Sequence record: MN159079.1
Direction: 5' to 3' (one strand)
DNA length: 64,000 nucleotides
Shown one piece after another: positions 8,701 to 64,000 of this stretch. A program made the position numbers and the translations under genes. The stretch's first letter is position 1. Every line of letters starts with the position of its first letter. The notes under the pieces were generated by a model, which had not been told where the DNA came from, ran no database searches, and saw only the letters and a list, made by a program, of their open reading frames with translations.

Positions 8701-11700
8701 TCGTCAGAATAGTGGGTGATGAACCTGTACTCTACGGTACGAATTTTAATCCCAATGGTTACGAGGTAGAACCACATAACGGCGCTGCCCCAGCTGGTTG
8801 GGGGTCTGGTTCGAACTTCTATTATTACGATCCGGCTAGTTGGAGAAATACTTTCATGCCGGTGATAGATGGACGGCGGATGAGTTGGTATGGTTACGGT
8901 TCGACCGTACCCGTTCTTCTGGGGAAACCTGGGGAAGGACTTCCTATCAACAGGTATTACTTTGGAACCCAAAGTACCCAGATGACCTGGGACACTGCTA
9001 AAGGAAGGGTGGTGAAGTTTGATGCCGAAATAGCCACCACTGTGGCTGTAAACGGAAACGCAGAAGTGACCGGAAGTGCTACGCAGTATGTTATCCCTGC
9101 ACAGTACACCGGGGTGGTGACAATCGACCTTTACAACGCCAATAAACTCATCTGGGCACCAGGACTGACAAACCTGATCCGGTTGGGGAGCGAAATAATG
9201 GAGGTTGACTTCTCTGGTTCAGACCAGTTTACGATTTCGGCTCCATTACCAAAACGTGTCACCAGTCTGAAACGTGCGTTCTATAAAGCTAAGGGTGCGA
9301 GTTATCCTGGGCTTCAAAATTGGAACGTGACGGGCGTCACCGACTTCACCGAGTGTTTTGCTGAAACCACCGCATTCAACCAAGATCTTAGCAATTGGAC
9401 CTTCGTTATGGGGAGGACATTGCGAGGGATGTTCCAGAACGCCGTGGCATTCAACCAACCTGTTCCCGGAACTTGGTTCCAATACATCCTGGATTGTTCC
9501 TACATGTTTGCTGGTTCCGGTGCGTTTAACAAACCTCTAACTGGAACCGCGTTACAGTGTAAAACAGCCATCGGTATGTTCCAAGGCTCCAAAGCGTTCA
9601 ACTCCAGTATTGATGGACTCAAGTTCCTGGAAATTGTGGATATCTCTGATTTCTTCAGGGAGTCGGTCGTTTTCAACCAATCCATAAACGGATTTGACGT
9701 TTCGAAGGTTGAGCGCGCGGAAAGGATGTTCCAAGGTGCGAAAGGGTTCCTCCAACCCATCACACTCAACATGAAGCAATGTCATTCAGTGTCAGGGATG
9801 TTCAAAGATAACCTTGTGTTTAATGCACTTGTGAATATCTCACTCCCTATCTGTACTGACTTCAGCCAAATGTTCATGGGGACCAAGCTGTTCAACCAGA
9901 AATTGCCTGCATGGTCATTTAGCCCCAGGACAACATTGCGAGAAATGTTCAGCGGGTCCAAAGCCTACAACCAGTCAATGGACCATTGGATGATGGAACG
10001 TGTCGCGTCCATTTCCAGAATGTTCCAGTTCGCCGGTGCTTACCAGCAACCTATCAAGACCTGGACCTTCTATAAGTTGGTTGACTGTTCTTACCTGTTC
10101 GCTAATTCCTCGTTCAATGCGGATGTCAATGATATAAAGTGGCCAAGTGATCCAACCCTGGGGATTAACGCCACTGGTATCTTCTATTACAATTTGGTTT
10201 ATAACCAACCACTGAGTAAATGGAATACCGTTGCATTCAAATTGTTCAATGGTATCTTTAATCTGGCAAGATCGTTTAACCAAGACATTTCAGCCTGGAA
10301 TGTCTCCAATGGTGAAAACTTTGAAAACCTCTTTAAAGACGCCATCGAATTCGATGGGGATATTTCCAACTGGAATGTAGGTAAATCCAAAACGTTCTCT
10401 TACTTCGCAGCGAATGCCGTCAAGTTCAAATCCGACCTTTCCAAGTGGGACGTGAGTTCTTGTTTCAACTTCGAAGCGATGTTCAGACACTGTTTGGCTT
10501 TCGATAGCGATATCTCTGAGTGGGATGTCTCCAACGGTACCACTTTCGAGTGGATGTTCGATGGATATTCGTTAACCGAAACCGTCACACCTGAATACTT
10601 TATGATCTTCAACCAAGATCTGAGTAAATGGAACGTTGGAAAGGGTGTCCGCTTTAATGCCATGTTCCGCAAGTGTCAATTGTTCACGTCTGACCTTTCT
10701 GGGTGGGATATGACAAACGCGCAAGAAGTCGGTGCGATGTTCCAACATTGCTACGAGTTCCAGTCGGAACTTGCTTCTTGGAAAGTGGCGAAGTTCACTC
10801 ATGTTCGTTACATGTTCTTCCACGCCCACAACTTCAACGCTCCTATCCCTGATTGGGACGTGTCAAGGTGTACTGAGTTCGACCAGATGTTTAGTTACAC
10901 CTACATGTTCAACCAGGACTTGAGTAACTGGGATATGAGCAATGCCAGAAACCTCAATAGGATGTTCGATGTTGCGGTGGCCTTCAATGGCAATGTTTCT
11001 ACTTGGGATGTTTCCAATGTAGTGACTTTCTGGGGAATGTTTAGGGATGCCGCAGTGTTCAACGGTGATCTCTCTGGCTGGGTTACATCCAATGCGAATG
11101 ATTTCAGTGGTATGTTCCAAGACGCGCTCTCGTTTGATCGGGATTTGAGTGGATGGGATGTCTCCAAGGGGATCAAGTTCAATGCGATGTTTAGGTCGAC
11201 CAAGTGCAATTTCGGTATGAACAACTGGAACGTGGGTAACGCCACTACCTTTGCCGAAATGTTCAAGGGGAACATTGTCTTTAACCAGAAACTGTCTACT
11301 TGGAAAACAGGTAAAGTTACTGATATGGCACATATGTTCTCTGGGTGCAAGGCACTAACGGATCCGGCGATCGGTAATTGGGATACTGGGCGTGTGGAAC
11401 TTATGAATCAAATGTTCTTCGATTGCCCTCTTTTCAATTCCGACATCTCTGGTTGGAACGTATCCAATGTGACAAACTTCTCCAGGATGTTTATGAGCGC
11501 GTTTAAGTTCAACGCTAACTTGTCGACCTGGAATGTTTCCAATGGTGTGACTTTCGAAAGAATGTTCCACACAACGGAACTCTTCAACCAACCTCTGAAT
11601 ACCTGGAGGATGGTGAAAGGCGAAGATTTCACAGATATGTTCTACGGAGCAAAAGCGTTTAACCAACCCATCAATGACTGGGGTATGGCCAGTGCTAAGA

Positions 11701-15480: not shown

Positions 15481-15580
15481 TTAACTATGTCTATGGACTT
15501 TTACCTATATTGTGCCAAGAGCTGTTATATGTCGTTATGCGACGTATAACGACTGAATGGTTTATGTTCCGCTATATCTT

Positions 15581-15604
15581 TTCAGATAGATATTATCCCA
15601 ATGT
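15581..15604 (+). promoter_or_regulatory. Recurring phage promoter-like motif, copy 1
   Basis: ttcagatagatattatcccaatgt; related copies at 26046, 28645, 35565 and 40549, all intergenic and upstream of plus-strand units. Confidence 0.6.
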
Positions 15605-15661
15605 ATGCACGTGGAGAAATTTGTGTATTACGCTTGAAGTACAAACAACTAGGAGTGACCT

Positions 15662-26025: not shown

Positions 26026-26045
26026 TTTTAGACACGCTATAAATG

Positions 26046-26069
26046 TTTGGATAGATATTATCATAGTGT
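26046..26069 (+). promoter_or_regulatory. Recurring promoter-like motif, copy 2
   Basis: tttggatagatattatcatagtgt. Confidence 0.55.
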
Positions 26070-26141
26070 CCAGACCAGATAAGTATGGGAGGATGTATGA
26101 TAAAATTTAGGATCTTTTGCGGTACATTATGGGAGTTAATC

Positions 26142-28611: not shown

Positions 28612-28644
28612 TTTATTCTTTCTTTTATTTTGTCCCCATAAAGT

Positions 28645-28668
28645 TTCAGATAGATATTATCAGAGTGT
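28645..28668 (+). promoter_or_regulatory. Recurring promoter-like motif, copy 3
   Basis: ttcagatagatattatcagagtgt. Confidence 0.65.
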
Positions 28669-28700
28669 ATGTCCTAGCTGTATTTATTAAAGAGGTAACA

Positions 28701-35536: not shown

Positions 35537-35564
35537 AATGACCTCTATTTAATGTGCAAATGAT

Positions 35565-35588
35565 TTCAGAGGTATATTATCTTAGTGG
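35565..35588 (+). promoter_or_regulatory. Recurring promoter-like motif, copy 4
   Basis: ttcagaggtatattatcttagtgg. Confidence 0.6.
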
Positions 35589-35620
35589 ATAAACTAATTT
35601 AATTTTTGTGAGGACTTATT

Positions 35621-38236: not shown

Positions 38237-38695
38237 ATGAAAAAGATTATTATCGCTAGCGCTTTTGTATTTGGTTCATTTGCAGTTCAAGCCGCTGACG
38301 TAGCCGTGTTGGGTGGTGGGATGTCCTATCACTTCAAACATGAAGGTCAGAACCAGGTACATCCCAGCATCGGGGTACAGATCGATAACTTCTCCGTTCT
38401 GTACACCACCAAGAATTCCATTGAACTCCCGTCCCTCCAGGTAGCTTATGGCGACAACTTCTTTGAATCCAAAGTTGTTGACTTCGGATATCGGGTTGGG
38501 CTTGCCACTGGGTATCGTAAAGGACACAAGTACAGTAACGGTGAATACTACTACGATGGGCACGAAATCGGAAACACTGGACTTCTCCCTCTGGTGACCA
38601 TCACCACCACCATCCACACCCCAATCCCCAAACTTGACTTGGTCGCTGATACAGCACCTAACGTAGTAATGTTTGGTTTTAAATACAACCTGTAA
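38237..38695 (+). CDS. Outer-membrane beta-barrel protein, PagP-like
   Basis: Signal peptide ending VQA-A; alternating beta-strands; SYH, NQVHPSIGV, KNS, GYRVGLATGY, LLPL; C-terminal beta-signal MFGFKYNL. Confidence 0.65.
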   Translation: MKKIIIASAFVFGSFAVQAADVAVLGGGMSYHFKHEGQNQVHPSIGVQIDNFSVLYTTKNSIELPSLQVAYGDNFFESKVVDFGYRVGLATGYRKGHKYSNGEYYYDGHEIGNTGLLPLVTITTTIHTPIPKLDLVADTAPNVVMFGFKYNL

Positions 38696-39836: not shown

Positions 39837-40205
39837 GTGAAACCCATCAGGATCAATCCGAGAGCTCAAGCGATTAACGTGGACTACCTGCCCACGCCAA
39901 AGCAATTGGAAGAATGGCACGATGAAGATGCGGTCATTAATCATCTAGCCAAGAAAGTATTAACAAAGTGGTATCAAGTACCTGCCAATAAGGTAGAGAA
40001 AGATAAAGCATTGTTATTCCTTCCGCAGGGTAAGTTGTACGACACACTTATTCCGAAGATGGGAATCAACAAGAGGGATGCGTTTAACCATATGGTGATC
40101 GTCCATGGGATGACAGAACCTGGTTCTCTGCAACTTCACTTGATGATGTACTTTCTTTGTAAGTGGTTCACCAAGAGTTCTCTAAGAACTTATTCTGAAG
40201 CCTAA
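39837..40205 (+). CDS. Hypothetical protein
   Basis: GTG start, AGGAG RBS. Confidence 0.65.
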   Translation: MKPIRINPRAQAINVDYLPTPKQLEEWHDEDAVINHLAKKVLTKWYQVPANKVEKDKALLFLPQGKLYDTLIPKMGINKRDAFNHMVIVHGMTEPGSLQLHLMMYFLCKWFTKSSLRTYSEA

Positions 40206-40207
40206 TA

Positions 40208-40238
40208 ACTCTCTGTCACCCAATGGGTGACAGAGAGT
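40208..40238. terminator. Bidirectional terminator
   Basis: actctctgtcaccc-aat-gggtgacagagagt. Confidence 0.8.
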
Positions 40239-40241
40239 TTA

Positions 40242-40523
40242 CTATTTATTATTTCTTTTGGTCATCGGAATGACAACAGGGCGTTTATAGTTGTCATCAC
40301 TACGATAGATCTGGAGATAAATTAATTCATCATCCCCAGTGGGTTCAGCGGCGACCCTAAAGGGGTAAAAGGTCAAACTGTCTTTGCCTTGGGTAAGGTT
40401 AGTGTAATAACCATCTATTGTCCCAGCCAGGTATGTCTTAGCTAAACCAGTGGAAATGTCCGTATATGGGATGGGACGTTCCTTTCTATTTATGTGTAGC
40501 CCGAAATTAGGCATGGGATTCAA
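40242..40523 (-). CDS. Hypothetical protein
   Basis: Isolated minus-strand ORF between a terminator and a promoter motif. Confidence 0.55.
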   Translation of the reverse strand: MNPMPNFGLHINRKERPIPYTDISTGLAKTYLAGTIDGYYTNLTQGKDSLTFYPFRVAAEPTGDDELIYLQIYRSDDNYKRPVVIPMTKRNNK

Positions 40524-40548
40524 CGTTAAAAATTAATATGGAAATGAA

Positions 40549-40572
40549 TTCAGACATATATAATTACAGTGT
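40549..40572 (+). promoter_or_regulatory. Recurring promoter-like motif, copy 5
   Basis: ttcagacatatataattacagtgt, about 76 nt upstream of the autotransporter start. Confidence 0.55.
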
Positions 40573-40648
40573 AAGCACATAAGGTGTTTATTCACTGATT
40601 AATTAATTATGTGGTCGCTAATGACCAACCTTTAACAGAGGAATAAAT

Positions 40649-43600
40649 ATGAAACTGTCTAACATCGCAATGATTATCGGGGCCGCTTTCGCCTCAGTGT
40701 CCTTCACCGCTTCGGCGGTAAAAGACCCGAACAAATACGGTCAAGATAACCACTACATCATGCTGGACATTATGCAAGTGGAAAGCGAGGTTAACTCCCT
40801 CGAATGGAAAATGGACAACCAAAAGGTTGACCTGTCCAATCTGACTGGTCGTGTCGATACCAATGAAGCGGATATCGCTGAACTCAAGCAAACCGCTGAT
40901 CAGGTTGATGGTGTGATCAATTATGTCACCAACAACCGTGAAGAGATCCAGGCCAAGTTCCAAAAGGAAGTTAACAACAGTGTGAATAACTACGTTGTTA
41001 ACAACCAGGCTGGTTTCGATGCTCACATTCAGAAGGTTGTAGAAGGAACCATGGCCGACAACCCCGCTGTCGATCTGGATCCGATCAATCAACAACTCGC
41101 TCAGAACTCCAAGGACATCGAACGTCAGGAAAAACTCATCCGTGATGAGAAATCCAAGATGGATGGCGTATCCACCATCATGTTCGGTGGTAAAGCCACC
41201 ACCAATGAAAACGGTACGTTCGTTGGATTCCAGCGTGAAGAAAGTGGCCAGCTGGTAGTCGGTCCTAACGGTGAACTCTACGGTTACAAAGAGAACGCTG
41301 GTCTGTACGGTCGCTACCGTCTCTTCGAAGACGCCACTAATGCAGAGTTGGGTCGCCTGGATAAGGTGAAAGCCAATAAGGACGATCTCATCGCTCTGGA
41401 TAGCCGGGTTGAAGTTGTTGAAGGTGATGTTGCTGTGATCAATGGCAAGATCGAAAAGGTTGAACGTGTTGGAGGTAAAATTGCTGCCAATGTTGACGTT
41501 ATCGTTGACAAGGGTAACAGTGTTATCGAAGGTGCTAAGACCAGCATCAACAACAGCATCGACAACAAGATCGAAATCGCCAAGGGTGAAGTTAATACCC
41601 AGATCGACAACTCCATCACTAACATTGTGAACGGTGGTAACACCGAGATCAATGCCAAGTGGGAAGGTGCCAAGGCCACCGCTAACGATTTCGACGAGCG
41701 GATCACCGCTAACAAGAATCGTATCGATGACCAAGCCGGTCGTATTGGTAAGGTTGAAGATCTCAGTGCTCAGAACGCCAAAGATGTCAAAGCAGCTAAC
41801 AAAGAACTTGTCCGTCTGGACAATGTCAAAGCTGACAAGACTGACCTGGACGCTCTGGGTGGTCGTGTTGACGTAATCGAAGGTGACGTAGCCACCATCA
41901 ATGGTAAGATCGAGAAGGTTGAAGGTAACAAAGACCTGATCATCTCCAAGGTTGGCGATGCGTACACCAATGTACGTACCGACATCACCAACGAGATCAA
42001 CAGCACTGTAACCGGTGCAATTGATGTTGCGATTGACAATGCCAAAACCACTGTGAACAACAAGTGGGAAGAAAACAAAGGTGATATCGTTGCCAATGTT
42101 AACGGCAAAGTCGAGAACATCCAAAATGACATCACCAACAACGTGATGAACCAAATTGGTGACATCGTAATTGATGGTAACAGCGAAACCGTTATCAACA
42201 TCAAGAACGACATTACCAAGGATGTAACCAACCAACTCAAACTCGATGGCAAGGGCGTTGCTCTGAACATCAAGAAAGAGATTCAGGAAGGTAACAACGA
42301 CATCTACAACAACATCTCCGGTAAGATCGAAGGTAAGTTCGATGATCAGTACGCTACCCTGGTAGCTATGGGTCAGGCTGAATCCGATCGTCTGGAAGCT
42401 AAGAAGGCTGACAAAGCAGATCTCGATGCCGCTGTACAAGCTGGTAAAGATGAAGCTGCCAACATCAATGCTTCTATTGGTGCAATGGGTGACCGTGTAA
42501 CCAATGTTGAAGGTGACGTGTCCAACATCAAGCAGGATGTAACTAACATCCAAGGTGATATCACCACTATCCAAGGTGACGTTGCTAACATCAACGGCAA
42601 AATCTCTTACGTCGAAAACAACAGCCAGGAAATCATCAACAAGGCTGGTGCTGCTGTAGACGCCAAGATCGATGTTGCTTACGAAGGTGCCAAGACCGAA
42701 GTGACCAATCTGTACGACAATGCTCGTACCGAAATCACTAACGAAATTGACAACGCCGTAAACGTTGCTGTGGAAGGTGCTCGTACTGAAGTTAACAACA
42801 AGTACGAAACCATCAAGAACGAAGTCGTTAACGGTGATAACAACACCTACAATTCCATCAAGGCTGACATCAGCAAAGATGTGAAGAACGAAATCGTCAA
42901 CAACATCACTGAAGGTAACAATACCGTTGTAAACGAAATCAAAGATGGTCTGGTTGAAGAAATCCGCGAAGAAGGTAAAACTGTCGTAGTGGATCTCCAA
43001 GACCAAATCGATGCGGCTAACGCACGTATCGATGTACAGACCGGTCGTGGTGAGCAGGCTTGGGCTTCCTATCAAGAAGACCGTGCGTATGCCACCCAGC
43101 AGTATACCCAGGATCGTCAAGTTGCCGTAACCACTTACAACAACGCCCGCGTTGAAGCTGAAAGTGCTTATGTTACTATGGATGATAAGAAAGCCGACAA
43201 GTCCGATCTGGATGTATTGAATGACAAAATCGATGGTGTCGCTGCCAACGGTAAAACCGACGAAGAAATCAAGGCTATCGCAGACCAAGCTGCTGCTGAC
43301 GCTGTAAACAATGCCAAGAAAGAAGTCGTCGTGGCTGTTAAAGACAAAGCTCCTGTAGTTAACGAAGCTGTAACCGCTGCTAAGACCGAAGCTAAGAAGC
43401 AGGTACAAGCTAGCATTGATGCGTCCATCTCCAAAGCGAAAGCCGCCGCTAAAGACCAAGCTGGTCAGGCTGTTGCTGCTGCTAAAGAGAAAGCACGTGC
43501 TGAGCTGGCCGCTGCCATGCCTGAGCTGAAAGGTAAAGCAGAAGTTGTTCGTACCGAAGCTGTTGAAACCCGCAAGCGTGCTGACCTGGCCCTGAAAGCC

Positions 43601-43966
43601 ACCCAGGACAACCACACTGCAATTCAACAAGAGCGTGCTGATCGTATCCAAGGTCAGCGTGAGACTCTGCAATCTGCCAACAACTACACTGATCAGAAAG
43701 TTGAACAACTGCGTGGTGAAGTCGAGCATAACCGTCGTAAGGCTGCCGCTGGTATCGCTGGCGTGGCTGCAATGACCAACATCCCGACTATCTCCCAAGG
43801 TAAGAACTTCGCGATTGGTGCTGGTATGGGTTACTACGATGGCGAGCAATCCCTGGCTATCGGTTCCCAAGGTCGTTTCAACGAGAACCTCACTGGTAAA
43901 GCAACTATCTCCACCGACTTCCACGGCAACACTGTAATTGGTGCTGGCGTAGGTTTCGAGTGGTAA
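40649..43966 (+). CDS. Trimeric autotransporter adhesin (type Vc) with YadA-type membrane anchor
   Basis: Sec signal peptide ending TASA-V; ~1000 aa Asn-rich coiled coil; C-terminal AAAGIAGVAAMTNIP...AIGAGMGYYDGEQSLAIG...TVIGAGVGFEW; GAGGA RBS. Confidence 0.92.
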   Translation: MKLSNIAMIIGAAFASVSFTASAVKDPNKYGQDNHYIMLDIMQVESEVNSLEWKMDNQKVDLSNLTGRVDTNEADIAELKQTADQVDGVINYVTNNREEIQAKFQKEVNNSVNNYVVNNQAGFDAHIQKVVEGTMADNPAVDLDPINQQLAQNSKDIERQEKLIRDEKSKMDGVSTIMFGGKATTNENGTFVGFQREESGQLVVGPNGELYGYKENAGLYGRYRLFEDATNAELGRLDKVKANKDDLIALDSRVEVVEGDVAVINGKIEKVERVGGKIAANVDVIVDKGNSVIEGAKTSINNSIDNKIEIAKGEVNTQIDNSITNIVNGGNTEINAKWEGAKATANDFDERITANKNRIDDQAGRIGKVEDLSAQNAKDVKAANKELVRLDNVKADKTDLDALGGRVDVIEGDVATINGKIEKVEGNKDLIISKVGDAYTNVRTDITNEINSTVTGAIDVAIDNAKTTVNNKWEENKGDIVANVNGKVENIQNDITNNVMNQIGDIVIDGNSETVINIKNDITKDVTNQLKLDGKGVALNIKKEIQEGNNDIYNNISGKIEGKFDDQYATLVAMGQAESDRLEAKKADKADLDAAVQAGKDEAANINASIGAMGDRVTNVEGDVSNIKQDVTNIQGDITTIQGDVANINGKISYVENNSQEIINKAGAAVDAKIDVAYEGAKTEVTNLYDNARTEITNEIDNAVNVAVEGARTEVNNKYETIKNEVVNGDNNTYNSIKADISKDVKNEIVNNITEGNNTVVNEIKDGLVEEIREEGKTVVVDLQDQIDAANARIDVQTGRGEQAWASYQEDRAYATQQYTQDRQVAVTTYNNARVEAESAYVTMDDKKADKSDLDVLNDKIDGVAANGKTDEEIKAIADQAAADAVNNAKKEVVVAVKDKAPVVNEAVTAAKTEAKKQVQASIDASISKAKAAAKDQAGQAVAAAKEKARAELAAAMPELKGKAEVVRTEAVETRKRADLALKATQDNHTAIQQERADRIQGQRETLQSANNYTDQKVEQLRGEVEHNRRKAAAGIAGVAAMTNIPTISQGKNFAIGAGMGYYDGEQSLAIGSQGRFNENLTGKATISTDFHGNTVIGAGVGFEW

Positions 43967-43982
43967 CGTAATAAAGTGATAA

Positions 43983-44014
43983 ACTCCTACCTCCCTTAAC
44001 GGGGAGGTAGGAGT
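43983..44014. terminator. Bidirectional terminator
   Basis: actcctacctccc stem paired with gggaggtaggagt, between convergent genes. Confidence 0.8.
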
Positions 44015-44038
44015 TCTTTATATCACTTATTTTTTTTG

Positions 44039-47000
44039 TTACTTGACCATTTTGATCGGAACAGTTACACGCCAATCCTTGGTTCTGAGAGCTGTTTCTT
44101 GATCAGTGAATGTGAAAGACACGTCTCCTGTACCAGCCTCACCTGTGGATGTGACCGTCATGGTTGTGTACCCGGAAGGATCCGGCTCACCAGTGATCTG
44201 TCCGACACTCTGGAAGAATCGATCATTCTTGACGACATCCTTAGTGATGCTACCCTTCATAACCTTGAATTGTCCAGACCAGCGATCCTGTCTCAGTACA
44301 AACTTAACCGTGGACGTTGCGTTATTAACCGCAGTGCCCTCTGACACGTTGAGTACGTCAACAGGTTGTTCAGGACAGACATACGTTCCTTCACACCTGA
44401 CGCTAAACTGTCGTTTGGCGATGGTCACGACAAGTTCCGGCCAGAACTCTCCACCAAGATGTGTGGTGCTAATCGAGAGATAATAAACACCAGGATCCAG
44501 TGCCGGATCGTGGATGAGCATGTTAGAATAACCCTGGGTCGCAGGGAGTCCCGGATCTTTATTCTTGATGCTCAACGTGTAGAACGTAGCACCCTGTAGT
44601 GGTTCACCATCTACCTCAATACGACACTTCATCCGTTGCATCTTGATAGGAACTATTCCTTCGCTGTCAGGATACAGGACCAGATCAGTGATGGGTGGTC
44701 GTGCCATAGCGATGTTACCAACAACACTGTGCGTCGTTACTTTACCATCTGGCGCGGTGTAGGTTGCATGAATGGTAAACGGTATGTCGTCGGTGCTGAA
44801 GTAGGCGTCACGGTTAGTGAAGAACAGAAGTCCATTCGCATCAGTGCCGCGTTTCTCCATTGCGGTCTGATTAACAACCCCTTCCCAAGACTTGTCAAAA
44901 GTAACTTCGATTTGGACATTGGGATCGTCAATAGCTACTGGCTTATCGTCGTAAGAAAGTGTCATAGGCATACTTTCTACTTCGAACGGCTGCCAGTTCA
45001 ACAACGCTTGGTGGGTGATAAGGATATTCTCATCAGCTTTCACTGTAGAGTCTATTGTTACCTTAGCCACCTGTGCTTCTGTAGGTGTTGTGATATCGTT
45101 CCTTGTAAACGCCACTACGTTCTTGTGGGATCCAGGCGCGATCATCTTCCAAGGAAGATCAAGGCTCTTCCCAGTGACATTTTCGGGAATACCAATCTGT
45201 ACACCGCCGGTGGTCGTAGTGAAAGCGGGAACTGTCTTGTGGTTATCCGTGAAACGGGTCTCATCATTCCACAATGCAAATGACACCACACCCTTATCAT
45301 CACGTTTACCGTCAAGAGTGAACTGATTAGGCATCGCCAGGAAATCAGGACCGTCGTAAGGCTTGAGAGTGAACTTCTTGGTGTACGAGAAACGACGCCA
45401 GCCATTATCGACACCAATAGCCATATCAAACTTTACATCTACCACCTTTTCCTCGGTTACTTTCTTGATGTAGAGCCAAGCTGTTTTATCCCAGGTATAA
45501 GGATCGATATGCTTCACGACTTCTTTACCAGGCGTGGTAACAAAGTCAATCAAGACATCTCTTGTCCGTTCTTCGCCGTTCACCAATACCTTAACTGGGA
45601 GGCCACCACCATCATAACCNNNNNNNNNNNNNNNNNNNNNNNNNNNNNNNNNNNNNNNNNNNNNNNNNNNNNNNNNNNNNNNNNNNNNNNNNNNNNNNNN
45701 NNNNNNNNNNNNNNNNNNCAGGTATAAGGATCGATATGCTTCACGACTTCTTTACCAGGCGTGGTAACAAAGTCAATCAAGACATCTCTTGTCCGTTCTT
45801 CGCCGTTCACCAATACCTTAACTGGGAGGCCACCACCATCATAACGATTTGCAATAATGTTTTCGCCGGACAGAGGGACAACAGAGATAACGGAATCTTT
45901 AACGATGTTGGGATAGACGTAAAGTTGGTCCCACCAAATCGTTCCCTGAGGAGATACATAGTGGCTCTTGAATCCAACTGTGTCGGTCACCATCACACCA
46001 GGCTGACCAGAGTCTCTGATCACTTCATAGAACAACCGGTTAGGTTCGGCGCGAGTTAACTGGATGAGCTTCTTGGGTCCCAATTCTTCACCAACTGGGA
46101 AATCCATGTCCTCAGTAGGAATGTTCTTCCCACCAATCGCAGCGATATAGTTGGTGTAAAGTGTTTCCCCTTTCTTACCTGTTAGTCCGTTAGGATCCAA
46201 CTTAACTTGGGTGAGTCTTCCGTAACCAGGAATAGCCTTGGTGATTTCCAGATCAATGAAACACTTGGCCGTGTAAACCTCGGTGAGGACTGTATGACGG
46301 AACGTCCCTATCAACAGGTCTAACAACACCCCGTCTGTGACAGCGTTGGTAATCGGTCCTGTATAGAGGACACCGCCCTTGTACTCTCCCTTGGACCGAA
46401 CACTTACGCCGTGGAGCATGGATGTCATGTATTCCGGGATAGTTGCCAGTTTAATGGGCTCGCCTTTAAACTTCGCCTTCACCACGATGCCTAGTTCGGC
46501 ACCGGTTGGTGCGTTAATAAGCAACGGATATCCGTAGAGCGTTAAATCAGAAGGAGTGTCTTTCTGGATTTTCACGGTCATCTTTGCGGTGGTGTCGTAG
46601 TCGAATCCACCAGAGCTATGAATCATGTTTACTTGGATTTCCTCAATGAAATCTTCAGTAGCTGATCCACGGAATGCCTTGATCACCATTTCCAGTTTGT
46701 TATCAGTGCGCTCGATGACCAATCGGTCAGACGGACTAAACGTCATGTCTACAAGAGTGGTAACGTCCACGTCACCAATGGTGAGCTTGAGATTATGCCT
46801 GACCTCTTGTCCACGCTGGATGTTGACGTTCTTGGGGATGTTGTGTTGTATGTCATTTAGACCCAACTCTTCCCGGATTAGTTCACTTACGTAGATGATG
46901 ACATTCTCGCTCCCGATCGCTTCGTCTGTTACCTTTACGGTTCCAGAGGTAAACGTGTTGGGATCGATGTCAGTGGCGTTCTTCCTCGATAACTCCATCG

Positions 47001-47475
47001 ATTTAAAGAAGATATCTCCAAAGAGATCATTAATCGCTTGGAGATCATTCAGTTGGCGATTGGGTAAACACACCCCGATTGAATTACGCCAGGCCAAGAA
47101 CAGCACTTTACCCTGGACGGTACCGCGTTTAAAACCTTCAATGAAATCTTCGAAGGTCATAACCACTTCTACCGCGACACCAAAGTCCGTGAGAACGTCT
47201 CTGAGCGATACTTGTTCCAGCTCCAGGTCAACCCTCGCAAAGTTACGAGAACGTCGTGTAAGGCACACACGTTTGACATTATCAGGTCCTGTATGGACTC
47301 GTTCAATGATAAAGTCTTCTGCTTTCATTCCACTGTAACGAACATCGGCAAGTTGACGGTCAACTATGTCACCCTGTTCTGTTACGAGTTCATGTCGTTT
47401 CCGGAGGAAACGTTTAACAGGTGAATACAATGGGTCTTTTACCCATCGTGGAAACACCTTGCTTTCTTCTGCCAT
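44039..47475 (-). CDS. Large virion/surface protein, paralogue 1 of a four-gene family; one gene interrupted by an N-gap (at least ~1069 aa)
   Basis: Tracked ORFs 45580-47499 and 44039-45586 overlap through a duplicated 127-nt segment; removing 45619-45845 (227 nt) gives a single open frame. Start at MAEESK with AAGGGG RBS. Confidence 0.7.
45492..45845. other. Assembly gap (99 N) flanked by an identical 127-nt direct duplication
   Basis: 45492-45618 equals 45719-45845; one extra C at 45619; Ns at 45620-45718. Confidence 0.9.
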
Positions 47476-47523
47476 AACTATACCCCTTATTGTCGTCATA
47501 GCATTTGAGAATAAACAAAATAA

Positions 47524-59276: not shown

Positions 59277-59333
59277 TTGGTTTGTTATAGCTTATTACCT
59301 AGGCATAGCATTCGGAAATAAATAAAGCCATAT

Positions 59334-62020: not shown

Positions 62021-62443
62021 TCAGATGGTGATATCGTCGAATGCACCTTCTTCTACAGTAGCGTCGATCTGACCTACCAGGTAGGACTTGACTTCTACTT
62101 CTTGGGGCGCTACTTGGACGTTATCACTGTTCAAGTGTGTATTGATCCACGGGATCGGGTTACTGTTGGAACCAGGGAAAGCTTCCGGGAGACCGATAGC
62201 CTTCATACGGATGTTGGTGATGTACTCGACGTACTGACAGAGAATGGTCTTATTGAGACCGATCATGGAACCATCTTGGAAGAGATAGTTGGCCCACTCC
62301 TTCTCTTGGTCGGCAGCGTCCTTGAAGATTTTCTGAGATTCCTGGAAACACTCCATGGCGATTTCCATCATCTCCGGATCATCACGGCCATCAGCCATGA
62401 GGTTCAGCATGTGCTGAGTACCGGTAAGGTGAAGAGCCTCGTC
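62021..62443 (-). CDS. nrdB: Ribonucleotide reductase class Ia beta subunit, 3' exon
   Basis: [15 protein letters not shown]...[17 protein letters not shown]...[19 protein letters not shown], near-identical to enterobacterial NrdB; 141 codons. Confidence 0.95.
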
Positions 62444-63472
62444 CGTTGTGGTCGATTGAGTTTGCAAAGCTCAACCCGTTCTCTTATGAACTGCTATCAT
62501 GTCACCATGTAGACCAGACTATATCACGATCCTGATTCGTTACATCAGGACCCACTGCGTTTCGAGTGCCATAAGCTTGCACCCTACTCTACTCCCTTCC
62601 ATGAACAACCGTTATTTGTTGTGCACGTGGTTTCGATAGTCGTTGCACTACCCCTGCCTAGTTTCACCAGAGCGCCATCTCGAAATGGTACTAGGGTCCA
62701 CATTGACAGTCTTTGCTATTTCTCTGTTTGTGTGTGTATCTTTCATTTCTAGGTATTTCAGGAATTTCTCTTTAAACCCATCTGGTTTATTAGAGCGAGG
62801 GATAGAGGTGAATTTATCATAGACCGCTTTCCATCGTTTACCGTGCCTCATCAAGGAGACATACCTGGGATGAATATTAAAGGTGCTGGCTATGGTTTCG
62901 TTATCGGAACCATTTACCATCATCTCAAATGCTTGATGTGCTTGGTCGGCTGTGAGTTTTGCCATGGAGTTTGTTTCTCCAGGTCTTCCTTTAGCCAAAC
63001 CTTTCTCATACGCCCGTTTTGTATTTTCGGCGTGAGTGATCACCTCTAAATTCTCTAATGCATTGTTGGTCTTGTCGCCGTCCTTGTGGTCGACAACCAT
63101 TCCTGGAGGGATACCTCCTTTGAAACAATGACAGAGAATGCGATGAACCGTCCCCGATCCTCCAACAAGCTTGGTGACGTGGTTTCCAATGAACCAGTAA
63201 CCTGAACTTTTAGAAATAACGGGTTTTAGAAAGATTTGTCTGGCTTCAGACCAAACACGACCATCCGGGTACACCAGATGTTTTTCAGTTATCCAAACAG
63301 GGAAATATTGCATCGTTTCGTCTCTAGCTTATACTGTTATAAGATAGGACTGTGGATAGCTCAGGATTGACTCAATATTTGTAACGACACGGTTTTCCAG
63401 TCCCGTTGAGTTGTCCCCTGAATTAACAGTGTTATTCAATTAGCATTACTGCTAAAGGCCGCTATGTCGTTA
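62444..63472 (-). mobile_element. Group I self-splicing intron (1029 nt) in nrdB, with a homing endonuclease in the P6 loop
   Basis: 5' exon ends in U (GCC CGU), intron ends in G, and splicing restores IAR/DEALH. Core elements: P AATTCAGGGGAC (63413-63424), Q AATCCTGAGC (63359-63368), R GTGCAACGACTATCG (62634-62648), S GTGATATAGTCT (62516-62527). P7 pairing GACUA/UAGUC; IGS GCGG. Confidence 0.93.
62648..63313 (-). CDS. Intron-encoded HNH homing endonuclease
   Basis: VHRILCHCF...VVDHKDGDKTNNALENLEVITHAEN; GETNSMAKLT DNA-binding segment; C-terminal HTH TNREIAKTVNVDPSTISRW. Confidence 0.92.
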   Translation of the reverse strand: MQYFPVWITEKHLVYPDGRVWSEARQIFLKPVISKSSGYWFIGNHVTKLVGGSGTVHRILCHCFKGGIPPGMVVDHKDGDKTNNALENLEVITHAENTKRAYEKGLAKGRPGETNSMAKLTADQAHQAFEMMVNGSDNETIASTFNIHPRYVSLMRHGKRWKAVYDKFTSIPRSNKPDGFKEKFLKYLEMKDTHTNREIAKTVNVDPSTISRWRSGETRQG

Positions 63473-64000
63473 ACGGGCGATCATTGAGATGATCTTGGCG
63501 TTACCTTCCATCAGTTCGCGTTCAGCGAATGCGAAGGAACAGGCGAAAGAAACATAGAACCGGATTGCTTCCAGGGCGTTGATGGACTGGAGACAGAGGT
63601 AGAGTTTCTTCTTGATGTCGCGTTTCTTGACGACCACCTGCTTACCATCGATGACGTGAGAACCTTCACCCACGGAATGAAGAAGGTTGGTCAGGTTGAT
63701 CAGATCGTCGTAGTACTTGGAGATGTCCTTGGCACGTTTCAGAATGTGTTCGTTCTGAACGATGTCGTCAAACACCACCGAGGGATCAGTGAAGATGTTC
63801 CGAAGGATGTGGGTGTAGGAACGACTGTGGATAGTCTCGGAGAAAGACCAGGTCTCGATCCAGGTTTCCAGTTCAGGGATGGAAACCAACGGGAGCAGTG
63901 CTACTGAAGGAGCACGGCCTTCCCTGAACATCGGCTTGAAGAGAGCCAGTACAGACTCCAGTGGGATTTCGAGTTTCCCCAGCCCATTGGAAAGAACCAT
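63473..64000 (-). CDS. nrdB: NrdB upstream exon (partial, runs off the window; first 27 codons do not match NrdB)
   Basis: [11 protein letters not shown]...SETIHSRSY...[16 protein letters not shown]...[12 protein letters not shown]; includes the radical Tyr motif ExxHSRSY. Confidence 0.9.

What the first reader, a model, noticed from the sequence alone, without database searches (positions are those of the whole stretch)
40549..44014. Apparently lytic jumbo phage encodes a complete, stand-alone trimeric autotransporter adhesin
Seen: a 1105-aa ORF with a Sec signal peptide, ~1000 aa of Asn-rich coiled coil and an intact YadA-type anchor ending ...GAGVGFEW. It has its own promoter motif and terminator and very biased, high-expression-type codons (GCT/AAC/ATC/GAA/GGT). 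No NSVAIG-type YadA head repeats are visible, so it looks like an almost all-stalk, head-less TAA. Known: type Vc proteins need host Sec and BAM and are displayed on the bacterial surface; phage-borne examples such as Eib are prophage lysogenic-conversion genes. Inference: a phiKZ-like phage displays a long fibre on the infected cell, possibly for aggregation with fresh hosts, shielding against superinfection or predators, or pseudolysogenic conversion.
Basis: partly seen in the sequence, partly recalled or inferred. Interest (0 to 1): 0.78.

Follow-up and report, generated by a model that had tools for sequence, protein, structure and literature searches.

The report
Phage-encoded trimeric autotransporter adhesin gene
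A giant, strictly lytic Aeromonas phage carries an intact bacterial-type surface-fibre (YadA-like adhesin) gene behind what looks like one of its own early promoters. Sister-phage records already name the gene, and similar genes occur in many other lytic phages, so the gene is real but not new and its role is untested.

Summary
ORF 40649-43966 (+) encodes 1105 aa: a Sec-type signal peptide, about 1000 residues of mostly helical stalk, and a YadA-type anchor. The anchor scores Pfam E=2.9e-14, and the model's best fold matches are the Hia, AtaA and YadA anchors.

The window is the last 64 kb of Aeromonas phage D9 (Ludhianavirus, phiKZ-like). The 99.6%-identical D3 gene and the D6 and LAh10 orthologues are already annotated 'putative YadA-like protein'. 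Anchor homologues occur in 88 phage records, mostly from virulent lineages, and this was noted in print in 2013. The Eib-only picture of phage-borne adhesins is therefore incomplete.

- **Promoter.** The 'own promoter' is a phage-specific 34-nt motif with 30 sites in D3. It also precedes the nuclear-shell and an RNA polymerase subunit gene and resembles the AR9 early consensus. It is invariant in all four sister phages.
- **Codon bias.** The gene has the strongest bias of any long gene in the window.
- **Selection.** The stalk and anchor are under purifying selection (dN/dS 0.04-0.09), while the distal tip is swapped in D6 and LAh10.
- **Relatives.** Full-length relatives sit in a Proteus lambdoid prophage, a Providencia chromosomal locus, another phiKZ-like contig and other large phage contigs.

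Most likely it is an early-made fibre shown on the infected cell's outer membrane. Its role (adhesion or exclusion) is inferred, not shown.

The parts
40207..40239 (.). Upstream bidirectional terminator-like hairpin (15 bp stem) between the convergent genes 39837-40205 (+) and 40242-40523 (-). It insulates the adhesin unit from the upstream + strand gene block.
   Evidence: sequence
40546..40579 (+). Phage-specific promoter-like motif (class A, core ..TTCAGAcATATAtAATtAcAGTGTA..), about 70 nt upstream of the start codon. Inferred to be an early promoter read by the virion RNA polymerase.
   Evidence: 29.8 bits here, and 30.4 bits leave-one-out for the D3 copy, against 15.9 for the best score in shuffled sequence. 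D3 has 30 sites, all on the + strand and all 17-104 nt upstream of an ORF with a ribosome-binding site. The motif is invariant in D9, D3, D6 and LAh10 while the flanks diverge. It resembles the AR9 early consensus ATATATTAT-(6N)-G (PMC5312081).
40638..40641 (+). Shine-Dalgarno GAGG, 7 nt before the ATG
   Evidence: sequence
40649..43966 (+). Complete coding sequence of the trimeric-autotransporter-type protein (1105 aa plus stop). It is D9_0262, labelled 'hypothetical protein' in the D9 record.
40649..40717 (+). Sec-type signal peptide, residues 1-23, with predicted cleavage after A-S-A
   Evidence: hydropathy and sequence. An N-terminal MKK-hydrophobic signal-like stretch is present in all 17 relatives, and an A-x-A-type end is readable in most of them.
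40718..41170 (+). Distal N-terminal tip and first coiled-coil segments (residues 24-174). Residues 26-50 are 68-72% identical to the Proteus and Providencia relatives. The whole region, together with the beta insert, is replaced in D6 and LAh10.
41171..41338 (+). Short beta insert (residues about 175-230, ..MFGG..GPNGELYGYKENAGLYG..). It is the best-conserved passenger module, 80-84% identical over residues 201-225 in four of the five relatives compared and 58% in the fifth.
   Evidence: There is no significant PDB match by sequence or by fold.
41339..43777 (+). Asn-rich, mostly helical stalk (residues 231-1043). Segments of period about 3.5 alternate with segments of period about 3.75-3.8. 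It contains repeated K-A-D-K-x-D-L breaks and mosaic blocks shared with relatives.
43778..43963 (+). YadA-type membrane anchor: four beta strands per chain, ending in an F-E-W C-terminal signal (residues 1044-1105; Pfam match 1048-1105)
   Evidence: Between D9 and LAh10 the last 100 codons show 5 synonymous and 0 nonsynonymous differences.
43982..44015 (.). Terminator-like hairpin (15 bp stem, 8 G-C pairs) shared with the convergent minus-strand gene

Best explanation
This is a genuine type Vc (trimeric autotransporter, YadA-like) protein that the lytic, nucleus-forming jumbo phage D9 makes for the surface of the cell it infects. It is not a virion part.

Proposed course of events, with each step marked as shown or inferred:

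1. The gene is a self-contained transcription unit: a phage-type promoter motif, a ribosome-binding site, the ORF and a hairpin terminator. Shown in the sequence.
2. The motif belongs to the class that also precedes the nuclear-shell gene and an RNA polymerase subunit gene. Transcription therefore probably starts early, by the injected virion RNA polymerase. Inferred by analogy with phage AR9.
3. Strong codon bias suggests efficient translation. The bias is shown; its consequence is inferred.
4. The signal peptide sends the chain through host Sec. The C-terminal anchor is inserted by host BAM as a 12-stranded trimeric barrel. The passenger is threaded out to form a fibre of the order of 150 nm. 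Inferred from the family; the length assumes about 1000 helical residues at about 0.15 nm each.
5. The distal tip, which is exchanged between sister phages, meets a variable partner. I lean to an adhesive role, in which the infected cell sticks to neighbouring bacteria or to surfaces. Blocking of later-arriving phages and protection of progeny from cell debris is the main alternative role.
For: Family membership: Pfam anchor E=2.9e-14, PDB sequence hits to Hia and YadA, fold hits to the Hia, AtaA and YadA anchors, and a helix-plus-four-strand topology.

Export signals are conserved. An N-terminal signal-like stretch and a C-terminal aromatic residue are present in all 17 relatives. The signal peptide is kept even where the tip is swapped.

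Selection: dN/dS is 0.04-0.09 over the last 520 and 300 codons against D6 and LAh10 (D3 shows no nonsynonymous change). The anchor has no nonsynonymous change.

Promoter class: the site scores 30.4 bits leave-one-out against 15.9 in shuffled sequence. D3 has 30 sites, all upstream of + strand ORFs, including the nuclear shell protein gene (phrog_4795, E=1.4e-81) and an RNA polymerase beta subunit gene. The motif is invariant in four phages and similar to the AR9 early consensus.

A different motif (GAATGCTATG, ending in the TATG that PMC5312081 reports for phiKZ late promoters) lies upstream of two of the neighbouring large minus-strand genes and not upstream of this gene.

Codon bias: Nc 35.5.

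Other virulent phages show the same arrangement. phiEco32 gp119 and GAP32 gp424 have signal peptides and sit among small non-structural genes. The FSL SP-058 and SP-076 homologues are not near tail genes (PMC3728262).

Relatives in bacteria are in adhesin-type or moron-type settings: a Proteus lambdoid prophage, after the tail genes and next to the integrase, and a Providencia locus beside an outer-membrane protein gene and a fimbrial usher gene.
Against: No expression, localisation or proteomic data exist for this phage group in the literature I could search.

The temporal class rests on analogy, not on mapped transcripts.

The D3 and D6 records annotate the gene as 'recognition of host receptor', and PHROG families 26246 and 17426 are labelled tail and adhesin. 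A virion role has therefore been assumed by others.

Tip swapping is also typical of phage receptor-binding fibres.

Trimerisation and membrane insertion cannot be tested with a monomer model, whose mean pLDDT is only 48.

The specific role (adhesion or exclusion) has no direct support.
Confidence: 0.68

Rival explanations
1. It is a virion fibre or receptor-binding protein, as the D3 and D6 annotation 'recognition of host receptor' implies. The YadA-like C-terminus would then serve only as a trimerisation or attachment module.
For: Annotation notes in D3 and D6. PHROG labels 'tail' and 'adhesin'. A long trimeric coiled-coil architecture with a weak fibritin hit (E=0.066). Modular tip exchange between sister phages. 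The gene lies next to very large minus-strand genes.
Against: A cleavable Sec signal peptide, conserved in all relatives, would take the protein out of the cytoplasm, where tailed-phage virions assemble. The anchor keeps the full barrel topology and the C-terminal aromatic signal under purifying selection. The promoter motif is the class shared with the nuclear-shell and RNA polymerase genes, not the TATG-type motif in front of the neighbouring large genes. The gene is a separate unit between two terminators. The large neighbours have no PHROG match, so they are not shown to be structural.
Confidence: 0.1
2. It is a horizontally acquired passenger gene (moron) with no role in the productive lytic cycle. 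It would matter only in a carrier or pseudolysogenic state, or be effectively neutral.
For: It has a mosaic relationship to a prophage moron in Proteus and to a chromosomal Providencia gene. It lies in a variable spot of the genome: the divergent upstream gene differs in LAh10. The tip-plus-insert module is rare, with 13 clusters among 1.8 billion representatives.
Against: The phage-type promoter motif is invariant in four isolates from two continents. G+C matches the phage. It has the strongest codon bias of the long genes in the window. dN/dS is 0.04-0.09. Related full-length genes occur in at least one other phiKZ-like lineage and in other large phage contigs.
Confidence: 0.12
3. It is displayed on the infected cell but acts mainly as a steric or decoy shield. 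It would exclude superinfecting phages or keep progeny from adsorbing to debris, rather than act as an adhesin. This is a different role within the same mechanism.
For: Inference only. An early-type promoter would fit the early expression of exclusion functions in other lytic phages; I know of T5 Llp and T4 Imm/Sp from the literature and did not test the comparison here. A fibre of about 150 nm would overtop most surface structures (inference).
Against: A pure steric shield would not need a swapped tip that looks specific. Bacterial relatives lie in adhesin-type loci. No data bear on adsorption.
Confidence: 0.3

Closest known systems
YadA, Hia and AtaA: trimeric autotransporter adhesins (type Vc secretion)
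   Same: Signal peptide, coiled-coil passenger and C-terminal helix-plus-four-strand anchor. The Pfam YadA_anchor match and the fold matches to 2gr7, 3emo, 9vnj and 2lme support this. The stalk alternates between periods of about 3.5 and about 3.75; pentadecad-type segments are a known YadA stalk feature (my own knowledge; the periodicity itself is).
   Different: It is encoded by a virulent jumbo phage behind a phage-type promoter. No YadA_head or YadA_stalk Pfam match and no recognised head were found. The tip and beta insert have no solved relative.
Eib immunoglobulin-binding proteins of lambdoid prophages in E. coli
   Same: A phage-borne trimeric autotransporter. The closest cellular relative found here (Proteus P0011) sits in exactly the Eib-like spot: after the lambda-type tail and fibre genes and next to the integrase.
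   Different: D9 is not temperate, and no integrase is annotated in D3. No Eib chain came back in the PDB sequence search at E<=1 or among the significant fold hits. Expression would occur during lytic infection, not in a lysogen.
YadA-anchor proteins of other virulent phages (phiEco32 gp119, GAP32 gp424, FSL SP-058/076, N4-like S6 and TR2, and others)
   Same: A signal peptide plus a YadA anchor, a position among non-structural or early genes, and an unknown function (PMC3728262; PMC10654107).
   Different: These share only the last 100-130 residues with the D9 protein, at 31-49% identity. Their passengers are unrelated and usually much shorter: 266 codons with collagen-like repeats in phiEco32 and 577 aa in GAP32. 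Among the phage records searched, the only phiKZ-like phages with the anchor that I recognised in the rows listed are the four Ludhianavirus phages (28 records were not listed).
Full-length family: Proteus and Providencia 'YadA-like family protein', and uncultured phage contigs (P0003-P0005, P0018)
   Same: 32-40% identity over up to 100% of the length. They share the signal peptide, the beta insert, several stalk blocks and the anchor, and the Proteus and Providencia members also share the tip. One relative is on a contig with a phiKZ-type sheath, PhiKZ_VTX and the S80 prohead protease.
   Different: The block order is mosaic. The uncultured phage copies have other tips. The genomic contexts differ: prophage, chromosome, or other phage lineages.

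Membership tests
Trimeric autotransporter adhesin (type Vc) | C-terminal YadA-like membrane anchor domain | tested here: met
   Pfam PF03895, 53.3 bits against a cutoff of 22.7, E=2.9e-14. Hia and YadA anchors match by sequence and by fold (E down to 3.4e-6).
Trimeric autotransporter adhesin (type Vc) | One helix followed by four transmembrane beta strands per chain, ending in an aromatic residue | tested here: met
   The AF2 model has a helix to residue 1043 and strands at 1054-1063, 1066-1078, 1081-1090 and 1095-1103. The protein ends F-E-W. Of the 17 relatives, 16 end in W and 1 in F.
Trimeric autotransporter adhesin (type Vc) | N-terminal Sec signal peptide | tested here: met
   K2, a hydrophobic core at residues 6-19, and A-S-A before V24. 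A signal-like N-terminus is present in all aligned relatives. This is a heuristic reading; no dedicated predictor was available.
Trimeric autotransporter adhesin (type Vc) | Coiled-coil passenger (stalk) | tested here: met
   Helix is predicted over residues 36-1043 with short breaks. Hydrophobic periodicity is 3.5 and 3.75-3.8. The Pfam YadA_stalk motif is not matched.
Trimeric autotransporter adhesin (type Vc) | Obligate trimer inserted in the outer membrane, with the passenger on the cell surface | not testable with these tools
   Only monomer prediction was available, and there are no experimental data for this phage group.
Trimeric autotransporter adhesin (type Vc) | Recognised head domain (YadA_head, Trp-ring, GIN and similar). 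Common in the family but not strictly defining. | tested here: not met
   No Pfam head family matched at E<=1. The beta insert has no PDB match by sequence or by fold (best E=2.9).
Eib-type prophage lysogenic-conversion adhesins | Carried by a temperate (lambdoid) prophage | tested here: not met
   The phage belongs to Ludhianavirus, placed in Chimalliviridae by PMC13678102. The D3 annotation lists no integrase or repressor. A nuclear-shell gene, a tubulin-like gene and split RNA polymerase genes are present.
Eib-type prophage lysogenic-conversion adhesins | Sequence relationship to the Eib passenger or Ig-binding region | tested here: not met
   No Eib chain appeared among the PDB sequence hits at E<=1 or among the significant fold hits.
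Phage tail fibre or receptor-binding protein (as annotated in D3 and D6) | Cytoplasmic assembly into the virion, with no export signal | tested here: not met
   A Sec-type signal peptide is present and conserved.
Phage tail fibre or receptor-binding protein (as annotated in D3 and D6) | Encoded and regulated with the late structural genes | tested here: not met
   It is a separate unit between two terminators. Its promoter motif is of the class that precedes the nuclear-shell and RNA polymerase genes. The temporal class itself is inferred.
Phage tail fibre or receptor-binding protein (as annotated in D3 and D6) | Present in purified virions | not testable with these tools
   No virion proteome for D3, D6, D9 or LAh10 was found.

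The most novel reading that the evidence does not exclude
A nucleus-forming jumbo phage uses its injected virion RNA polymerase to make a fibre of about 150 nm from the first minutes of infection, and the fibre is exported through host Sec and BAM. The phage thereby re-surfaces its 'virocell'. The exchangeable tip would set which neighbouring cells, surfaces or rival phages the infected cell engages. That would make lytic-phage trimeric autotransporters a general, overlooked class of infected-cell surface effectors, shared by modular exchange with prophage morons and bacterial adhesin loci.
Probability: 0.3. Interest if true: 0.7.

Novelty: new member of a known kind. Interest (0 to 1): 0.42.

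Why it matters
YadA-anchor genes are scattered through many virulent phage lineages (88 records here). I found no functional study of any of them in the literature available to me. In databases they are labelled variously as tail protein, adhesin, virulence gene or hypothetical protein.

This copy is a useful case for three reasons. It has unusually clear signals: an early-type phage promoter shared with the nuclear-shell gene, extreme codon bias and a conserved anchor. It has a natural tip-swap pair among sister phages. And it belongs to a phage family whose infection cycle is under intense study.

Showing where and when the protein appears would settle whether these genes are virion parts or infected-cell surface proteins, and would correct annotation across many phage genomes. 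The question also bears on safety screening of therapeutic Aeromonas phages, where an 'adhesin' hit is often read as a virulence gene.

Tried and rejected
- **Head or stalk Pfam families:** none matched.
- **FGG-like connector idea for the beta insert (recalled from memory):** no PDB sequence hit. Foldseek gave nothing significant; an AtaA stalk fragment came second at E=3.1, which is not evidence. The idea remains unproven.
- **Asn in the coiled-coil core (N@d idea):** rejected. In the Asn-rich segments Asn is roughly 180 degrees out of phase with the hydrophobic positions.
- **Sigma-70 promoter:** none on the + strand.
- **First guess at a promoter word (TATATAATTAC):** not enriched. It was replaced by the 34-nt matrix.
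- **Late-promoter class:** only a few GAATGCTATG sites were found and no robust matrix could be built. 'No late promoter in front of the gene' is therefore weak. A conserved TTATGT about 35 nt upstream of the ATG is unexplained.
- **Identity of the uncultured phage contigs:** no megablast match. Only the sheath protein placed L005 near the Vibrio phiKZ-like phages, at about 51% identity.
- **Large downstream minus-strand genes:** no PHROG match, so I do not call them structural.
- **PagP label of the 152-aa neighbour (from LAh10):** not supported by Pfam, NCBIfam or a PDB profile search.
- **Chimallin by Pfam or PDB:** no hit. PHROGs did identify it.
- **Tip-plus-insert module in public collections:** the IMG/VR scan gave 0 loci. 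The genome scan gave 1 locus, in Proteus cibi.
- **Literature:** PMC4178840, the phiKZ transcription paper, is not held. One search on 'LAh10' alone returned superconductor papers.
- **Full-length AF2 model:** low confidence (pLDDT 48). I used it only for secondary structure and for the anchor.

Full report
**What is there**

The window is the last 64 kb of GenBank record MN159079.1, Aeromonas phage D9 (partial genome, genus Ludhianavirus), matched at 100% identity. PMC10673249 places D3, D6, D9 and LAh10 in the phiKZ-like group, and PMC13678102 places the genus in Chimalliviridae. D3 encodes a nuclear shell protein (phrog_4795, E=1.4e-81), a tubulin-like protein and split RNA polymerase subunits. 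No integrase is annotated.

The ORF is at 40649-43966 on the + strand and encodes 1105 aa. The D9 record calls it a hypothetical protein.

**Anatomy of the protein**

- **Residues 1-23** form a Sec-type signal peptide: K2, a hydrophobic core and A-S-A before the predicted cleavage site.
- **Residues 24-174** form the distal tip and the first helical segments.
- **Residues about 175-230** form a short beta insert. This was the most confidently modelled part, with pLDDT 70-84.
- **Residues 231-1043** are helical with short breaks.
- **Residues 1044-1105** form the four-strand anchor.

The anchor is supported in three ways. Pfam YadA_anchor scores 53.3 bits against a cutoff of 22.7. The Hia and YadA anchors match by sequence. 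The only significant Foldseek hits of the model are the Hia, AtaA and YadA transmembrane domains.

Asn makes up 10.2% of the protein and there is no Cys. The hydrophobic period alternates between about 3.5 and about 3.75-3.8. In the Asn-rich segments Asn lies opposite the core, so it is on the surface. No known head or stalk Pfam family matches. The beta insert has no solved relative.

**The transcription unit**

Hairpins with 15-bp stems flank the unit at 40207-40239 and 43982-44015. No sigma-70-type site lies upstream on the + strand.

Instead, 40546-40579 carries a 34-nt motif that recurs in the window at 15578, 26043, 28642 and 35562. A matrix built from four of the window's sites (leaving out the adhesin's own) and refined on the complete D3 genome finds 30 sites. 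All are on the + strand, each lies 17-104 nt upstream of an ORF with a ribosome-binding site, and none appears in shuffled sequence. The adhesin gene's site scores 30.4 bits when left out of the model, which ranks 11th of 30; the best score in shuffled sequence is 15.9. It carries all six invariant positions.

The motif is identical in D9, D3, D6 and LAh10, although the 5' leader and the start of the gene diverge in D6 and LAh10. The same motif precedes the nuclear-shell gene and an RNA polymerase beta-subunit gene. Its core, ATATTAT-(6N)-G, resembles the experimentally defined early (virion RNA polymerase) consensus of phage AR9 (PMC5312081).

A different motif, GAATGCTATG, lies upstream of two neighbouring large minus-strand genes and of one D3 gene beside the one annotated as similar to a phiKZ-like internal head protein. 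It ends in the TATG that PMC5312081 reports for phiKZ late promoters.

I therefore infer early transcription. This is an analogy, not a measurement.

**Codon use and selection**

Nc is 35.5, the lowest of all genes of at least 200 codons in the window; the next lowest is 44.0 and the median is about 51.5. G+C equals that of the flanks.

Over the last 520 and 300 codons, dN/dS is 0.04-0.09 against D6 and LAh10. In the last 100 codons there are 5 synonymous and 0 nonsynonymous differences against LAh10.

In contrast, about the first 255 residues of D3 and D9 are replaced in D6 and LAh10. Those phages carry an unrelated module of about 110 residues that contains Cys and Trp, while the signal peptide is kept.

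**Relatives**

Full-length relatives, at 32-40% identity and up to 100% coverage, all have the anchor. Their settings are as follows.

| Relative | Setting |
|---|---|
| Proteus sp. (P0011) | Lambda-like prophage, directly after the tail tip and fibre genes and next to the integrase |
| Providencia alcalifaciens (P0017) | Chromosomal locus between an outer-membrane protein gene and a fimbrial usher gene |
| 169-kb contig (P0004) | Carries a phiKZ-type sheath, PhiKZ_VTX and the S80 protease; the sheath is about 51% identical to Vibrio phiKZ-like phages |
| Other large phage-like contigs (P0003, P0005, P0018) | Carry genes such as Acb1, thymidine kinase, a ribonucleotide reductase subunit and a T4-type gene |

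Conservation is mosaic. The tip (residues 26-50) is 68-72% identical only to the Proteus and Providencia proteins. The beta insert (residues 201-225) is 80-84% identical in four of the five relatives compared and 58% in the fifth. Blocks at 326-375 and 501-550 reach 72-92% in some relatives. The anchor region is mostly 40-70% identical.

The tip-plus-insert module is rare. It matches 13 clusters at E<=1e-3 among 1.8 billion representative proteins. It was found in one of the 185,579 species genomes scanned and in none of the IMG/VR contigs.

**How new is it**

The anchor alone is found in 88 phage records from many virulent lineages. phiEco32 gp119 and GAP32 gp424 have signal peptides and lie among small non-structural genes.

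PMC3728262 (2013) already noted yadA homologues in virulent Salmonella phages, phiEco32, cyanophages and a Pectobacterium phage, located away from tail genes. PMC10654107 (2023) lists the domain as a frequent auxiliary gene of N4-like viruses. I found no functional study.

The gene is thus a new member of a known, functionally unexplored kind.

**Interpretation**

Several features point to a protein exported to the outer membrane of the infected cell rather than a virion fibre:

- a conserved export signal;
- an intact anchor under purifying selection;
- a promoter class shared with the nuclear-shell and RNA polymerase genes;
- a self-contained unit between two terminators;
- the parallel arrangement in other virulent phages.

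About 1000 helical residues would give a fibre of the order of 150 nm; this is an inference.

The swapped tip suggests a specific, variable partner, so I lean to an adhesive role. Exclusion or shielding is the main alternative. Neither role is tested. A virion role, as the D3 annotation implies, cannot be excluded without proteomics, but the signal peptide makes it hard to reconcile.

I have not repeated the position and have deleted nothing.

Noticed in passing
window 40694-43924 (- strand): A 1076-aa antisense ORF lies exactly codon-aligned with the adhesin gene. It stays open only because the sense gene uses no TTA, no CTA and a single TCA codon. It is a by-product of codon bias, not a gene.
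   Followed up: yes
window 15578-15611, 26043-26076, 28642-28675, 35562-35595 and 40546-40579 (+); 30 sites in D3 (L013-L018): A 34-nt phage promoter-like motif class, apparently not described for this genus. It always lies upstream of + strand genes, including the nuclear-shell and an RNA polymerase subunit gene, and it resembles the AR9 early consensus.
   Followed up: yes
window 47497-47505 and 59304-59312 (- strand); D3 upstream of 80242 and of 171143-174376: A second motif..TTTATTT..GAATGCTATG, lies upstream of large genes. It is possibly the late (TATG-type) promoter class. Too few sites were found to build a model.
   Followed up: partly
window 38237-38695 (+): A 152-aa protein with a signal peptide and beta-rich sequence lies about 2 kb upstream of the adhesin gene, in the preceding + strand gene block. 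The LAh10 record calls the orthologue PagP, but Pfam, NCBIfam and a PDB profile search give no support. It may be a second exported envelope protein.
   Followed up: partly
D3 record 8759-9277 (L013): The phage's three tRNA genes are Trp, Asp (GAC) and Asn (AAC). The adhesin is 19% Asn plus Asp (113 N, 96 D) and prefers AAC, so the tRNAs may help translate it. There are no tRNA genes in the window itself.
   Followed up: partly
window 44039-47499 (- strand): This gene is a single 1077-aa ORF in D3, D6 and LAh10. In the D9 record it is interrupted once by an assembly gap (a run of N) with a duplicated stretch on either side, and it is annotated there as two genes. This is an assembly artefact, not biology.
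   Followed up: partly
window 62021-64000 (- strand): The ribonucleotide reductase beta-subunit gene is annotated in two pieces on either side of a homing-endonuclease ORF. In D3 the gene is also in two pieces, but with a small hypothetical ORF between them instead. This looks like a mobile-intron-type polymorphism.
   Followed up: no
L019 2667-5537 (D6) and L020 2597-5563 (LAh10): The sister phages carry a different N-terminal tip of about 110 aa, with Cys and Trp, on an otherwise near-identical stalk and anchor. In LAh10 the divergent upstream gene is also different and much larger. This spot is a recombination hot spot.
   Followed up: partly
window 40207-40239 and 43982-44015: The two hairpins that flank the adhesin unit share their outer bases (AACTC...GAGTT) and their 15-bp stem length. 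Similar strong hairpins follow many genes in the window.
   Followed up: no
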